Positions 26,391-45,730 of a stretch of DNA of 64,000 nucleotides are shown here, in pieces (within the stretch, counting starts at the first letter, position 1; the number at the start of each line of letters is the position of its first letter). Made by a program: the position numbers and the translations under genes. Under the pieces are notes generated by a model. The model had not been told where the DNA came from. It did not search any database and was given only the letters and a program-made list of their open reading frames with translations. The stretch is from the NCBI GenBank assembly GCA_051294905.1, contig CM119381.1, positions 2,232,001 to 2,296,000 of the forward strand, given 5' to 3'. The DNA comes from Botryllus schlosseri (Eukaryota).

Positions 26391-26649
26391 CATGCAGTGA
26401 CCACCATTTACTATCACGCGCCCTTTGTCTCGGAGATTCTTGACCATCCCTCACCGGAAAACAATGTCTTTCAATTTCCTAGTCTGGCCCGTAGACTTTT
26501 ATATATCCCCATTGATGCTGCAATTTCCGCTTATAAACCAATAGTAAATGTGAAAATTCAACTATGCCATGCAAAGCAACTGAGCCTACAAATATAGCTT
26601 ATTAGAGTGTTCCCAGATTTATAGAACGCAAACAAACATTACGGTGGTG

Positions 26650-26679
26650 CGGGGCCTACGATAAGTATCGTAGGCCCCG
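26650..26679. mobile_element. 30-bp palindromic micro-insertion with 7-bp TSD
   Basis: ggtggtg[cggggcctacgata-ag-tatcgtaggccccg]ggtggtg: perfect 14-bp stem and perfect 7-bp direct repeat. Confidence 0.8.
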
Positions 26680-26854
26680 GGTGGTGAAATTTAGAATCTG
26701 AGGGTCGCACAGATTTGGCAAAATACTACAACCGGGGGAACCATAGCAATGTATATCGGGATTAGTGAGGGTTGTAATGGAATGCGCTACTTCTAGACGG
26801 GCAGAAAAGAATAGCCTCTTATATTTCCGTTGAATCTAGATACCACGTTATGTC

Positions 26855-27113: not shown

Positions 27114-27420
27114 TAGGGTTACTATATTTTGAGAACCTAAAAAGAGGACACTTTTCACATATTTTGAACGCTCCATCACCTGACAAGAAAACTGGTGATT
27201 TAAAAAAAAATCGACCCATGTTACTGTATTGATAGAAACAAAAAGTCATCACTTCGACTCGACTCGCGATCTACCCGATTTTTTTTTTGCGAAACTCTGA
27301 TGTTCGCTGCATCGGGATCGCGTTTCGGGTCGCATTTTAACCCTTTTTAGTGAAAAAGAGGACAAATTCCCCAAAAAAAGAAGATTTAGGTGTCATCCAA
27401 GGACACTTTCAAGCCCCCAG
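27114..27420 (+). mobile_element. Family C (AAGAGGACA) hAT MITE, partial
   Basis: tagggttactatattttgagaacctaaaaagaggacact matches the left end of 45387-45730; aaaaagaggacaaat and aggacactttcaa recur. Confidence 0.65.
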
Positions 27421-36150: not shown

Positions 36151-36939
36151 ATCCAATGTCCATTAGACGTACTGGCAAATGAGCCTATGCTGGACAGTAC
36201 ATCTATGCCGCGGTCATCCAAGGTCAGTTTTGTTTACAAGCGAACATTTGTCCCACATGCGTCATCTTGATTCTGTGTCTATTAATTGGCTCGACTCCAT
36301 ATACTCCTGCAAGGCCAGTCATCGTTACGCTTTGTTTTTCAAGAACTGGGCTCCCGAGGGAGATTTGACCGAGCGCTTATCCTGTTTTTCATCGCGCACA
36401 GTTAGTACGATAGTCAGCTTCGAGTGGGCGAGGTGGCACCATCGCGACTCCCTCGAGCCTTAAAACCTATTAGCGGTGTATTTTTGGATCGTACTCCCAG
36501 GAGTAACCGTTTTTCAGACACAATCTATTTCGGTGACCACGGCCGACTCTTTCATGAAGTTTAACAATGCGCGATGCTCTCGAATGGCTTTACCGCGACT
36601 TAGGTATGAGTAATTATCGAATGTGTACACGAGCAGAATAATTACGGTCTCGGCATAGCAGTTTAAAGACACCATTTCGCATTGTACTCGTGGATAAAGC
36701 ATTAAAACTAGATCAAGAGACTCTTGCATTTACAGAACTTAAGTATACAATTGAATTATTATATTAATATCGAAAATATCCTGGTTTATTTCAGTCTTAA
36801 TATATCATTCAATTGTAAAGTAAGCTCGCGGATGGATTGTTAATCGATCCGCAAAACAAACTACAAAATCCCGTCCGATATTCTACAAAATGTTCAATTA
36901 AATTAGGTCCACAGTATTTCGAAATCCAGAAGAGAGGAC

Positions 36940-36973
36940 CGGGGCCTACGATGTTCGAATATCGTAGGCCCCG
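36940..36973. mobile_element. 34-bp (17+17) palindromic micro-insertion with 7-bp TSD
   Basis: agaggac[cggggcctacgatgttc|gaatatcgtaggccccg]agaggaa; arms 16/17 identical; the paralogous family C site at 45416-45422 has a single agaggac and no insert. Confidence 0.85.
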
Positions 36974-37203
36974 AGAGGAAACTTTCTACAAATCATAAAA
37001 CTTCTAAAATCGGACGAGAAAACTTATAAATTGAAATTTTTTACTGTAGTCACTGCGGCCGGAGTCCAGATTTCTCGTCATTTATGGCATTTAGTATAGT
37101 TGTACCTGTACAATCGCCGACCTGTCAAAGCTATAATAGAGGACACGTTGGCAAAACGGAGGAGATTTTAGATTTCTTGAAAAAGGAGGACGTGTATGGC
37201 AAC

Positions 37204-39199
37204 CAGACATGGGGTGATTACTTCGTGAATGTAATCGATTGCGATTACGATTACTTCTGAATGACGCGATTACGATTACGATTACGATTACAGCAAAATC
37301 AGGAAGTAGTCGATTACGATTACGATTACATTGGAAAAGTAATCACGATTACTCACGATTACATTTATTCTGCATCTTAGAAGTTATATATTGGAAGACA
37401 ATATATGGATTGCGCTGAAAGGCCTAATGAGATAACAACTTTCTTTAAAAAAGATGCGACATTTGTTTGTTACGTCGTAAAGTACCCATGCCCATTTTAT
37501 AGAGGACGATTTATCGCACACAACGATTTGCATTCTTGCTACGTCCACAACCGCCGCACCCAAAATTTCCCAATAGGGCGGAGAGATAGCTCGAAAGGGA
37601 ATCAAAGTAGGTCTATTTCGTAAACCAATACAAATTATAGACTATTTTCGAGAGATTTCATGAACTTGAAAATTTTCTACGAGCATCGCGATTTAAATGT
37701 CTCTATATAGCTTGATTTTGAAATACATACGTCTCCTCCTCAAGAAAAAAAGCATGCATAATTTATTGTAACAGGCATTTAGTTGCCAGTCAATACCACG
37801 CCACGACGCACCAAAAGACACACGCAGTTTCGGCCAACATGCGAATCCACGAAGTGTGCTACTAATAAAAGACATTGGCCGAAACTTGGGGTATGTGTCC
37901 ATTGTCAATACCCGCGCTGGGTGGGCGTGACTAATAGTCTGGTCCGTCCAATTTGAGCCCACAAGGCAAATGCCACCCGGGCACCCACAGAGCATTAAAG
38001 ACATGGCAATTTGTGTGTGCGTCTCACGCAAGTATTTCTTTTAGTCTGCTACGTCTGGGCCACTACAATATCTGTTTGATTATATAACAGACCGGAGGTT
38101 ACGAATTAACAACGTCCCCTAAAGTAATTATTACAAGATACCAGATGTTATACCTATGAATCACGTGCCCCCAGCTCATCAGGTAAATCTGACCATCGGG
38201 GGCTGAGAGAGTATTAAAAATGAATAGTAATATAATGCATTTACCAATATTATATGACGAAATTAAATCTTCAACTTGAAAATTTACTACCCTATGGGGG
38301 CCAAAGACCAACGTTTGGAGTGGGGGGATTTGCTGTTTTGGTCCTGATTCTAGCTACAAGCCACGCTAACATTGTATATAAGCCGATGGCTATGGCGGCA
38401 GGTCCAAATGTTGAGTAAAGCATTGTGAAATAACGATTGGCGCCCGTTTCAAGAAGAATCATATGAGAATAAGAGAAGGTGAACATAAAATTCTGCCTTC
38501 AACTTAATACGGATAATGTAATGCAAGCAGCCATTTCGAGAAACGGCTCGGTTATGATATATATCAGTAGCTGTTGATTTTTAATGCTTCGTCGTGGAAA
38601 CCGTAATGTTTTATTTGACGAGTAGGCCTACAAAATTTCAAACCTTTTTCCGGTGTACGTTCGTGCTACATAAGCCTACTGCTCGTCAAGCAGCAACGGT
38701 CAAACTGCGTTTAACTAAGCATAACCAAACATCAATACAAAAGTTACTATTTTAAACTAGGCAGAGTGGTGATTAACTGTTCTGATAACCTGATATACAT
38801 CAGGGTGAGTGTTCTTACAATCACACCAATTACATCGAATATCTATTCACTATGTGTGGATAGCTGGATAAATCATACTGACGCAATGACGAGCAAAGCT
38901 AATAGGCCACTTCTGACGTAATAAGGAGTAGTGTCATTTGGAAATCTAACGTTTGTGCTATCACTAACTGGTATAATCCTTGTTCATGTTCACGAATGTT
39001 CAGTTTATGTCATAGTCCTGTACAAATAAAAAGTAATCGTTCTTTCACAAAGAAATCGATTAAATACGGGAAGTAGTCGATTACGATTACGATTACTTGG
39101 GAATTTTTTCGAATGTAATCGATTGCGATTACGATTACTTGAAAATGCTGTAATCGTCGTAATCGATTACGATTACTAATCGCGATTACCCCATGTCTG
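37204..39199. mobile_element. ~2-kb hAT non-autonomous element with GATTAC subterminal arrays
   Basis: TIR cagacatggggt versus accccatgtctg (12/12); perfect TSD atggcaac (37196-37203 and 39200-39207); (gattac)n arrays at 37215-37365 and 39075-39190. Confidence 0.93.
37540..38346. mobile_element. Family E MITE nested inside the GATTAC element
   Basis: TSD attct(t/a)gc (37532-37539 and 38347-38354); collinear homology with 34831-35342 (ccgcacccaaaa; accacgcca..acgcaccaa; gggggcc..aagaccaa; ggtcctg end). Confidence 0.7.
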
Positions 39200-41202: not shown

Positions 41203-41232
41203 CGGGGGCTACGATACTTATCGTAGGCCATC
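41203..41232. mobile_element. Decayed 30-bp palindromic micro-insertion, inverted copy of 26650
   Basis: cgggggctacgatacttatcgtaggccatc matches the reverse complement of 26650-26679 at 26/30; flanks gtactga and gacctga match at 5/7. Confidence 0.65.
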
Positions 41233-41284: not shown

Positions 41285-42378
41285 GTGGCGAGATAGCATG
41301 GTGGTATAATCCGCAGCTGCAACACCCAATGGGTTGGTTGCGGGTTCGAGTCCGACCGAGGTCGACTCCAGAATTCCTACCTAAGTGATGGAGGTTTATC
41401 TGGACTCCGCCTCGCCATATCATCCGTGTAGGTCAGGGATGTCAAACATACGGCCCGCCGGATGATTTCATCCGGCCCATGAAGCAATTTCGAGTAGATT
41501 GAAAAATGCGTGCACGTTGAATTAAACAATTAATAATCCCTCAAGACCGCAAATGTCGAATATGTTCATATGTCACTTTGTATAACATTCAGACTGCGGA
41601 CTTGCGGTTTCTAGTCACCATTGGGAACTATAGTCGCTGAAATTGACACCCATTTACGAGAACGCAATAAAATTGGATATTGAGATAAGTTTTTTAACAA
41701 ATTGACCAAAAACGAGTACGGTAATTCACAGAAGCTATACCCTTATATGCAGGTTACAAAGAGAATATAATAGTTACACAGAAATATGAATTGAAATATC
41801 TATGGTCGCATTGTTGCTTCACTTCTGATTCCCCTGAATCGCGACATAATAGTGATGAAGCTAATTCCAACGTTCTCGTTTACAGCTAAAACCTTTGTAT
41901 TCCTTACAACGATACGCAGGGCCGACGCCATTATACGACTAAAACAAGGCAGTATAGAAAAATGCCAACTTACATCATCGTTAGAGCCACTGTTCTAGCC
42001 GCCCAATCATCGCATCATTGCTAATTTCATTGTTGGCGAATAAAGGCGTTTCTACATTAAACTCCTATGACCCGTAATATAACATAATACTGTGTGGGGC
42101 ATGCGAAGTATTCTAATGAAAAACAATGACATTGATTTTGAGGATAATATTTTGGAATCATTTGATTGGTGCGGCCCGCGAGCTATTCGAAGGTTTGAAT
42201 CCGGCCGCAACATAATTTGAGTTTGACGCCACTGGTGTAGGTGGTGTCTTATAAAGCCTAGAAGTGGGCCGTGCTACAAGTGGGCAGCTACGGAATAAAA
42301 ATGAAGAAAATTGACCAGATGTAAATGAAAATAGTCGTCGACAAACACCATTACGACCACACACAATAACAACAACAA
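41285..42378 (+). mobile_element. tRNA-derived SINE split by a Charlie-like hAT MITE
   Basis: Head with A box and gggttcgagtcc B box at 41285-41433; the body resumes at 42235 and runs to an (AAC)n tail. Confidence 0.9.
41434..42234. mobile_element. hAT (Buster/Charlie-like) MITE
   Basis: TIR cagggatgtcaaac versus gtttgacgccactg (11/14); perfect TSD gtgtaggt (41426-41433 and 42235-42242); ggcccgc motifs at both ends. Confidence 0.92.
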
Positions 42379-45386: not shown

Positions 45387-45730
45387 TAGGGTTACCATAT
45401 TTTGGAAATCTGAAAAGAGGACACTTTCAAAATTTGCAGACTTGCAAAACAAGAGGAAAATCCTGAAAAATGGTCAATTTTTCCCACTTCGTGGTCGGTT
45501 GACTAAAAAAAGGTCAACCTTCCGGCTCAGATCCTGATATAGCCGCCGGATCGTTACTTAAGTGCTGCTTTACTGTATCTCAGTCGAACTTTGCCCTAAC
45601 TTTAACCAGAATTCTGAAAAAAGATAACAAAATCTCGAAGAAAGAGGAGATTTGGGCGTCCTCCGAGGACACTTTCAAAAAGTCGAAAAAGAGGACAAAT
45701 CCTGTTAAAAGAGAACGTAAGGTAACCCTA
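45387..45730 (+). mobile_element. hAT MITE, family C (intact reference copy)
   Basis: Perfect 10-bp TIR tagggttacc versus ggtaacccta; TSD atatagaa and ttatagaa (7/8); repeated aagagga(ca) motifs. Confidence 0.9.

What the first reader, a model, noticed from the sequence alone, without database searches (positions are those of the whole stretch)
36933..36980. 17+17-bp palindrome with a 7-bp TSD, shown to be an insertion by an empty paralog: P-element-type excision scar or ultra-minimal transposon
Seen in sequence: agaggac[cggggcctacgatgttc|gaatatcgtaggccccg]agaggaa sits inside a family C MITE, and the intact family C copy has a single agaggac (45416-45422) with no insert. This shows a 34-bp insertion plus a 7-bp duplication. 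The same cggggcctacgat ends recur at 26650 and 41203. Established knowledge: Drosophila P transposase cuts with a 17-nt stagger and leaves TIR-derived overhangs on the donor site, so repaired scars keep about 16-17 bp of each TIR between the TSDs; P-superfamily TSDs are 7-8 bp, whereas hATs make 8. Inference: these are either scars of a P/THAP9-like family or a tiny self-complementary element moved in trans. Standard repeat finders would probably miss objects this short.
Basis: partly seen in the sequence, partly recalled or inferred. Interest (0 to 1): 0.8.

Follow-up and report, generated by a model that had tools for sequence, protein, structure and literature searches.

The report
P-type transposon excision scar
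The 34-base palindrome is the scar left when a P-element-type jumping gene cut itself out of this sea-squirt chromosome; several hundred such scars survive in the genome, and together they show that the unusually long staggered cut known from the fruit-fly P element also occurs in a distant relative.

Summary
Window 36940-36973 is a 17+17-nt palindrome between AGAGGAC and AGAGGAA. Two paralogous MITE copies (27143, 45416) carry one uninterrupted AGAGGAC.

The scar reading is supported:
- The 13-nt end motif occurs 1504 times in the 495-Mb genome, against 0 for the reversed control.
- 243 loci are short end-to-end pairs with highly variable centres of 0-30 bp. Only 2 loci have centres of 31-60 bp and 1 has 61-90 bp.
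- All 17 pairs read with flanks have a 7-bp duplication (9 perfect, 7 with one mismatch, 1 with an indel).
- Long elements of 1.2-7.3 kb share the same ~45-bp inverted ends and 7-bp (once 8-bp) duplications.
- These long elements carry THAP and P-type transposase remnants. Full-length homologues have THAP + TNP-like RNase H + GTP-binding insertion domains.
- Scar arms stop at TIR nt 17-18, or 18-19 in the variant with one extra base. This is just outside a conserved ACGGCC.
- The common scar classes are those predicted by microhomology joining of two identical 3' overhangs.

A RAG1/Transib-like ORF found in one long copy belongs to a nested Chapaev3 element, not to this family.

Other first-stage notes flagged the same kind of footprint elsewhere in this genome.

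Verdict: a new member of a known kind (P superfamily, Galileo/1360-like 7-bp duplication), with an unusually rich natural record of footprints.

The parts
36933..36939 (+). Left copy of the 7-bp target-site duplication (AGAGGAC)
   Evidence: The target is single-copy in paralogues at 27143 and 45416.
36940..36956 (+). Left scar arm: the first 17 nt of the transposon's terminal inverted repeat (ATATTC variant, with one A>G change at position 14)
   Evidence: listed there as C11:2268940. It matches TIR nt 1-17 of long elements L048, L051 and L052.
36957..36973 (-). Right scar arm: 17 nt of the opposite TIR, read on the minus strand
36974..36980 (+). Right copy of the target-site duplication (AGAGGAA; last base changed)
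26643..26686 (.). Second scar. A 30-bp palindrome (26650-26679) lies between perfect 7-bp duplications GGTGGTG. It belongs to the recurrent class seen at 11 loci: an 18-nt arm plus a 14-nt arm joined over a TA microhomology, from the ACTT TIR variant.
   Evidence: listed there as C11:2258650.
41203..41229 (.). Degraded scar of the same 30-bp class in the opposite orientation. It has one substitution and has lost the last 3 nt of one arm. The flanking 7-mers match at only 5 of 7 positions.
   Evidence: the class assignment is my own reading.
45416..45422 (+). Empty target site (single AGAGGAC) in a paralogous MITE copy
27143..27149 (+). Second empty target site (single AGAGGAC) in another paralogous MITE copy

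Best explanation
The palindrome is an excision footprint of a cut-and-paste transposon of the P superfamily.

1. Insertion. An element with about 45-bp terminal inverted repeats beginning CGGGGCCTACGAT inserted at AGAGGAC inside a MITE and duplicated 7 bp.
2. Excision. Its THAP-type transposase later excised it. The 3' strand was cut at the tip of each repeat. The 5' strand was cut 17 (sometimes 18) nt inside, just outside a conserved ACGGCC. Each flank therefore kept a 3' overhang made of the first 17-18 nt of the repeat.
3. Repair. The two overhangs have the same sequence and cannot pair end to end. End-joining filled and joined them, here 17+17 nt, which gives a palindrome between the two duplication copies.
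4. Later change. One arm base and one duplication base have since mutated.

Shown: the insertion with its duplication, the parent family, the P-type coding remnants, the variable centres and the sharp arm limit. Inferred: the cleavage chemistry, the overhang polarity and the repair pathway.
For: Insertion and duplication:
- Two empty paralogues carry the target once.

A family, not chance:
- The motif has 1504 hits against 0 in the control.

A discrete class of short pairs:
- 243 loci have centres of 0-30 bp, 2 have 31-60 bp and 1 has 61-90 bp.
- Among the 50 loci listed, total lengths run from 26 to 56 bp and about 30 different sequences occur.

Duplications:
- All 17 short pairs read with flanks have a 7-bp duplication: 9 perfect, 7 with one mismatch, 1 with an indel. 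The chance of at most one mismatch in 7 positions is about 0.13% per site.

Parent elements:
- L046, L050, L051, L052 and L056 have perfect 7-bp duplications and L055 has 8 bp. They have the same TIR variants as the scars.

Coding remnants:
- THAP domains lie at L048:1101-1337 (E 5e-14) and L050:2060-2347 (E 4e-13). L050:2425-2982 gives a weak match to the TNP-like GTP-binding domain (E 0.0016).
- That piece has 150 genomic matches. At least 35 of the 56 ATTCACGG-type ends have such a match 1-1.4 kb inside the end, in the expected orientation. On contig 1, 7 of 10 matches lie within 6 kb of a terminus, where about 2% is expected by chance.
- Full-length homologues P0128, P0145 and P0171 carry THAP + TNP-like RNase H N + GBD.
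- Genomic copies align to P0145 over up to residues 174-869 in a 695-aa open frame.

Arm limit:
- ACTT variant: 70 of 74 arms have TIR nt 18, 5 of those 70 have nt 19, and none reaches nt 21.
- ATTC variant: the base after nt 17 is TIR nt 18 in 20 arms, the complement of nt 17 in 26 arms, and C or T in none of 46.
- AACTT variant, which has one extra base: arms end at nt 18-19, and none of the 100 listed rows continues into ACGG.

Repair classes:
- The recurrent classes equal the predicted microhomology products. These are 34 = 18+18-2 (TA), 30 = 18+14-2 (TA), 36 = 19+19-2 (TA), 31 = 19+15-3 (TTA) and 26 = 15+15-4 (ATAT).
- Longer centres are templated copies of arm sequence.

Literature:
- P transposase makes a 17-nt staggered cut (PMC7776569).
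- Galileo, a P-superfamily element, makes 7-bp and occasionally 8-bp duplications at GTANTAC (PMC4168063). The duplications here give GTnnnAC (n=21).
Against: - No fully intact transposase copy with both termini could be read.
- The GTP-binding-domain hit in the family's own remnant is below Pfam's cut-off.
- Whether the cut lies 17 or 18 nt inside is not resolved. In three of the four TIR variants, nt 18 equals the complement of nt 17.
- Identical scars recur at many loci (about 45 of the 31-bp class), which amplification would also produce.
- About 40% of the ACTT-type long ends on contig 1 sit inside a larger inverted repeat rather than at a terminus.
- Only the source individual's data cover the locus, so no full, scar or empty polymorphism was seen.
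Confidence: 0.87

Rival explanations
1. The 26-36-bp palindromes are themselves mobile 'nano-MITEs'. They are minimal TIR-TIR units that the family's transposase moves in trans, and each makes its own 7-bp duplication.
For: Identical units recur at many loci, each with a different 7-bp duplication. The 31-bp class is at about 45 loci, the 30-bp class at 11 and the 26-bp class at 6 or more.
Against: - The centres are highly heterogeneous, with dozens of sequences.
- Every abundant class is the product predicted by microhomology between two overhangs. The equivalent class is the most common one in two different TIR variants (the 30-bp and 31-bp classes).
- Many units contain templated filler between two full arms.
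- The units lack TIR nt 19-45, which are conserved in all long copies and presumably hold the binding sites.
- No subfamily-like shared substitutions were seen.
Confidence: 0.06
2. The short pairs are extreme internal-deletion derivatives made by interrupted gap repair (synthesis-dependent strand annealing that copies the element in from both ends). They are not retained cleavage overhangs.
For: Internally deleted long copies are common. One short pair keeps 37 nt of one TIR (C13:22967071).
Against: - Interrupted gap repair predicts a continuum of retained lengths. Instead there are 243 loci with centres of 0-30 bp, 2 with 31-60 bp and 1 with 61-90 bp.
- The arms stop abruptly at nt 17-19 in about 240 arms inspected.
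Confidence: 0.04
3. The family is mobilised by the RAG1/Transib-like (Chapaev-type) protein encoded inside the long copy L046.
For: The only long ORFs in a long copy are at L046:2651-4307. The predicted fold matches Transib and RAG1 (E about 1e-6). There is a weak match to the RAG1 N-terminal family.
Against: - The ORF lies in a separate element, L046:2373-4736, with its own ends (CACTGGTCAAC...) and a 3-bp TAA duplication.
- The host sequence is continuous in L055.
- Eleven other copies of that gene have no CGGGGCCTACGAT nearby.
Confidence: 0.01

Closest known systems
Drosophila melanogaster P element and its excision footprints
   Same: - THAP-type transposase with an RNase H fold and a GTP-binding insertion domain, seen here in homologues and as remnants.
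- A long staggered donor cut that leaves about 17 nt of each inverted repeat on the flanks.
- Footprints made of two partial repeats between the duplications.
- Templated filler in some junctions.
- Internally deleted non-autonomous copies.
   Different: - The duplication is 7 bp rather than 8 bp.
- The repeat is about 45 bp rather than 31 bp, and its sequence is unrelated.
- Arms of 17-18 nt (18-19 in one variant) suggest the cut is set by an inner motif rather than by distance from the tip.
- The host is a sea squirt.
- Cleavage here is inferred from scars and not measured.
Galileo and 1360 (P superfamily, Drosophila)
   Same: - A 7-bp, occasionally 8-bp, duplication at a palindromic GTANTAC-like target. 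Here the consensus is GTnnnAC (n=21).
- A THAP transposase.
- Some copies have very long inverted repeats (foldback-like). Here L047, L049, L053 and L054 do.
   Different: No sequence relationship of the ends was tested. Most copies here have ordinary 45-bp repeats. I found no description of Galileo footprints of this kind in the papers searched.
Ciona P-like elements, vertebrate THAP9 and zebrafish Pdre2
   Same: P-type transposase genes in chordates. Pdre2 has short inverted repeats and duplications and can be excised by zebrafish THAP9 (PMC10983969, PMC7776569).
   Different: Pdre2 has 13-bp repeats and an 8-bp duplication. The papers read here describe no natural record of its footprints. 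The relation of this family to the Ciona elements was not tested.
hAT and Tc1/mariner footprints
   Same: They are also small insertions left between duplications after excision.
   Different: hAT leaves palindromic copies of flanking bases through hairpins on the flank, with an 8-bp duplication. Tc1/mariner leaves 2-3 nt of each end at a TA. Neither leaves 17-19 nt of the repeat (my knowledge; not tested here).

Membership tests
P superfamily of DNA transposons | N-terminal THAP zinc-finger DNA-binding domain in the transposase | tested here: met
   PF05485 matches at L048:1101-1337 (E 5e-14) and L050:2060-2347 (E 4e-13). Both lie inside elements bounded by the family's repeats.
P superfamily of DNA transposons | RNase H-like catalytic domain split by a GTP-binding insertion domain (TNP-like RNaseH_N, GBD) | tested here: met
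   The family's own remnant gives only a weak GBD hit (E 0.0016, below the cut-off). Its full-length homologues P0128, P0145 and P0171 (E 1e-19 to 1e-32 to the remnant) carry PF21787 and PF21788. Genomic copies align to P0145 across residues 174-869.
P superfamily of DNA transposons | Terminal inverted repeats with a 7-8-bp target-site duplication | tested here: met
   Repeats of about 45 bp. Five long copies have a 7-bp duplication and one has 8 bp. All 17 scars have 7 bp.
P superfamily of DNA transposons | Long (17-nt) staggered cleavage that leaves 3' extensions | tested here: inconclusive
   The scar arms end sharply at nt 17-18, or 18-19 in one variant. This is what such a cut predicts, but the cleavage itself was not observed.
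P superfamily of DNA transposons | GTP as a cofactor | not testable with these tools
   Needs biochemistry.
Excision footprint (as opposed to a mobile miniature element) | Variable junctions between truncated ends of a longer parent element, at sites that carry that element's duplication | tested here: met
Excision footprint (as opposed to a mobile miniature element) | The same site is occupied by the full element in another individual or lineage | tested here: inconclusive
   Only runs from the source sample hold the locus. Their contigs show the scar and no other allele.
Chapaev3 / Transib-RAG1-like transposons | 3-bp TWA (Chapaev3) or 5-bp (Transib) duplication, and ends beginning CAC | tested here: not met
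   The family has a 7-bp duplication and ends beginning CGGGG. The Chapaev3-type gene in L046 sits in a nested element with its own CAC ends and a TAA duplication (PMC3014272).
Dada | 6-7-bp duplication, no terminal inverted repeats, insertion into small RNA genes, large intron-containing transposase | tested here: not met
   Long inverted repeats are present, the targets are diverse and the transposase is THAP/P-type (PMC3706591).

The most novel reading that the evidence does not exclude
Some of the recurrent 26-36-bp palindromes may still be substrates of the transposase and move as the smallest known transposable units ('nano-MITEs'), so that part of the 243 loci would be insertions rather than scars. 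A milder novel point is better supported. The fossil scars show that the long staggered cut of P elements is shared by a chordate lineage and is positioned by an inner repeat motif (ACGGCC) rather than by distance from the tip.
Probability: 0.07. Interest if true: 0.8.

Novelty: new member of a known kind. Interest (0 to 1): 0.45.

Why it matters
The 17-nt staggered cut is regarded as a peculiarity of the Drosophila P element and has been measured only there. Several hundred natural scars in a sea squirt show the same geometry in a distant P-type family with a 7-bp duplication. This suggests the long stagger is an old property of the superfamily.

Cleavage geometry can therefore be read from genome sequence alone. 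The comparison of repeat variants also points to where the cut is positioned.

The scars are a natural catalogue of germ-line end-joining outcomes in a chordate, including microhomology use and templated filler. They could also serve to count past excisions and to annotate short palindromes that repeat finders miss.

Tried and rejected
1. I first took the 573-aa ORF in long copy L046 for the family's transposase. I spent a homology search, a structure prediction and a fold search on it. It has a RAG1/Transib-like fold, but DNA comparison showed it lies in a nested Chapaev3 element. I rejected it as the family's enzyme.

2. I considered Dada because of its 6-7-bp duplication and rejected it after reading PMC3706591.

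3. The abundant P-type family with 792-813-aa ORFs is probably not the parent. Its three contig-1 copies have no end motif nearby, and the family's own remnants give only weak PF12017 hits.

4. I looked for a repeat variant reading ATATTCG that would explain the G after nt 17 in many ATTC-type scars. None of the 56 long ends has it.

6. PDB sequence searches gave nothing useful.

7. MAFFT misaligned the paralogue when the insert was left in. I replaced it with a local alignment of the joined flanks.

8. The polymorphism test was uninformative, because only the source sample holds the locus.

9. Word searches of earlier findings for the motif returned nothing.

Full report
**Observation**

The sequence at 36933-36980 reads AGAGGAC, then a 34-bp palindrome of two 17-nt arms, then AGAGGAA. 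The arms are complementary at 16 of 17 positions. Position 14 is G in the left arm and A in the right. The 13-nt end motif CGGGGCCTACGAT occurs five times in the window with up to 2 mismatches, against 0.48 expected.

The other occurrences are:
- a 30-bp palindrome at 26650-26679 between perfect GGTGGTG repeats;
- a degraded copy at 41203-41229.

I removed the 34 bp and one 7-mer. The flanks then align without a gap across the junction to two paralogous MITE copies that have a single AGAGGAC followed by ACTTT, at 27143 and 45416. The insertion plus 7-bp duplication is therefore real.

**Genome-wide picture**

The window is contig 11, 2232001-2296000, of a 495-Mb assembly. Earlier notes of this scan call the animal a sea squirt.

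The motif has 764+740 exact matches, against 0 for the reversed control. Of these, 243 loci are head-to-head pairs separated by 0-30 bp. Only 2 loci have 31-60 bp between the motifs and 1 has 61-90 bp. The short pairs are therefore a discrete class and not the tail of a deletion series.

Their centres vary widely. Among the 50 loci listed, total lengths run from 26 to 56 bp and about 30 different sequences occur. All 17 short pairs that I could read with flanks have a 7-bp direct repeat: 9 perfect, 7 with one mismatch and 1 with an indel.

**Parent elements**

Pairs of the motif 1.2-7.3 kb apart are long elements. They have about 45-bp inverted repeats and 7-bp duplications (L046, L050, L051, L052, L056) or 8 bp (L055).

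After the shared 13 nt, four repeat variants occur, all followed by ACGGCC: AACTT, ACTT, ATTC and ATTT. The same variants appear as scar arms. Mixed ATTC/ATTT ends occur in the long copies L051 and L052 and also in scars.

The 21 duplications give a weak palindromic consensus GTnnnAC in an A/T-rich context. This resembles Galileo's GTANTAC (PMC4168063).

**A false lead**

The only long ORFs in a long copy (L046) encode a 573-aa protein with more than 2000 homologues and no Pfam family. Its predicted structure matches Transib transposase and the RAG1 core (E about 1e-6, TM about 0.4-0.47). This is far better than its matches to Hermes or P transposase.

DNA comparison showed that this gene lies in a separate 2.4-kb element at L046:2373-4736. 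That element has its own ends (CACTGGTCAAC...) and a 3-bp TAA duplication. The host sequence is continuous in L055. These are the published features of Chapaev3 (PMC3014272). It is a nested passenger, not the family's enzyme.

**The family's own coding remnants**

L048 and L050 carry THAP domains (E 5e-14 and 4e-13). L050 also carries a 186-aa frame with a weak match to the TNP-like GTP-binding insertion domain. A C-terminal remnant about 500 bp from one end is shared by L046, L048, L050, L051, L055 and L056.

The 186-aa piece finds 150 places in the genome. I compared those coordinates with the 56 ATTCACGG-type ends. At least 35 ends have such a remnant 1-1.4 kb inside, in the expected orientation. 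On contig 1, 7 of 10 remnants lie within 6 kb of a terminus, where about 2% would be expected by chance.

An exhaustive protein search gave full-length homologues of 833-873 aa. They carry THAP + TNP-like RNase H N + GBD, and one also has the P-element HTH.

Genomic copies align to one of these homologues over up to residues 174-869 in a 695-aa open frame at C15:12617887. Further long frames lie at C10:11841767, C10:11980110, C12:25852055 and C3:6920406. The last of these lies 1.3 kb inside an ATTC-type end at C3:6919118.

The family is therefore a P-superfamily transposon.

**Geometry of the scars**

- ACTT variant: 70 of 74 arms of at least 17 nt carry TIR nt 18 (A). Only 5 of those 70 carry nt 19 (C), and none reaches nt 21.
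- Many scars are exactly 18 + filler + 18.
- ATTC variant: the base after nt 17 is TIR nt 18 (A) in 20 arms and the complement of nt 17 (G) in 26. It is never C or T. This fits arms of 17 or 18 nt, with the next base copied from the opposite overhang.
- AACTT variant, which has one extra base at position 14: arms end at nt 18-19. None of the 100 listed rows continues into ACGG.

In all variants the arm ends just outside ACGGCC. I infer that the inner cut is positioned by that part of the repeat and not by distance from the tip.

**Repair classes**

Two identical 3' overhangs can pair only through self-complementary microhomology. The abundant classes are the predicted products:
- 34 bp = 18+18-2 (terminal TA);
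- 30 bp = 18+14-2 (TA), seen at 11 loci including window 26650;
- 36 bp = 19+19-2 (TA);
- 31 bp = 19+15-3 (TTA), seen at about 45 loci;
- 26 bp = 15+15-4 (ATAT). I predicted this class before I saw it listed.

The window's scar at 36940 belongs to the ATTC class, in which 17+17 nt are joined directly. Six other loci carry this class. Longer centres are duplications of arm sequence, that is, templated filler.

**Comparison with what is known**

[quoted passage not shown] P-type genes are known in Ciona and in vertebrates. Zebrafish Pdre2 has 13-bp repeats and an 8-bp duplication (PMC10983969). Galileo and 1360 are P-superfamily members with a 7-bp duplication.

This family fits the P superfamily on every feature I could test. 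Cleavage itself and GTP use are untested. It is a new member of a known kind. The unusual aspect is the size of the preserved footprint record and what it says about cut position.

**Limits**

- No independent individual covers the locus.
- The 17-versus-18 question is not resolved.
- Arm statistics were counted by hand from listed rows.
- One subgroup of ACTT-type long copies (L047, L049, L053, L054 and others) is embedded in larger perfect inverted repeats. These extend at least 130 bp beyond the motif, so the motif is not terminal in those copies.
- Several other first-stage notes on this genome describe the same kind of footprint. I treated them as leads only.

Noticed in passing
L046:2373-4736 (G000:C1:669072-671435); also L058-L068: A young Chapaev3 element has ends CACTGGTCAACAA... 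and a 3-bp TAA/TTA duplication. At least 12 copies are 92-97% identical. It encodes a roughly 573-aa protein (P0001 is an intact version at 97% identity). The predicted fold matches Transib/RAG1 (E about 1e-6) and the N-terminal zinc finger gives a faint match to the RAG1 N-terminal family. Conserved D270, D324, C343/C346, H500/H505 and E519/E522 (A1) recall the acidic and zinc residues of RAG1 as I remember them; RAG1 was not aligned here.
   Followed up: partly
L047, L049, L053, L054 (G000:C1:26723700, 36860200, 12459200, 36841800): These ACTT-variant copies are near-perfect long palindromes. L049 is 7.3 kb, and the ORFs listed for it are mostly mirrored on the two halves. Their inverted repeat continues at least 130 bp outside the CGGGG motif, so there is no direct duplication at the motif. 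They are foldback-like structures reminiscent of Galileo, or inverted duplications made by aberrant transposition.
   Followed up: partly
G000: e.g. C6:29542296, C4:2654349, C8:17407244, C10:971474, C13:16234514, C2:28706748: A second, abundant P-type family has strong Tnp_P_element matches and many open frames of 792-813 aa with identical scores, so it was probably active recently. Its contig-1 copies have no CGGGGCCTACGAT nearby.
   Followed up: no
G000:C4:15357039-15359594: An intact 853-aa P-type transposase ORF, 43% identical to P0145 over residues 1-870 and 46% identical to the L050 remnant. It is a third, more distant P lineage in this genome.
   Followed up: no
window 26650, 36940, 41203; also C3:22318073/22320312, C7:5998975/6013206, C12:7230660/7253940: The scars cluster. 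This window holds three within 15 kb, against a genome average of about one exact scar per 2 Mb. Several other pairs lie 2-25 kb apart. This fits local hopping or a regional insertion preference, as known for P elements.
   Followed up: no
window 37224-37400: A short tandem repeat of gattac units (gattacgattacg...) has summed contig depths up to about 10^5 times those of the flanks in the source runs. It is a very high-copy satellite-like sequence.
   Followed up: no
window 41290-41365: A tRNA-like stretch (ggttgcgggttcgagtcc...) lies next to the degraded scar. It is probably a tRNA-derived SINE head.
   Followed up: no
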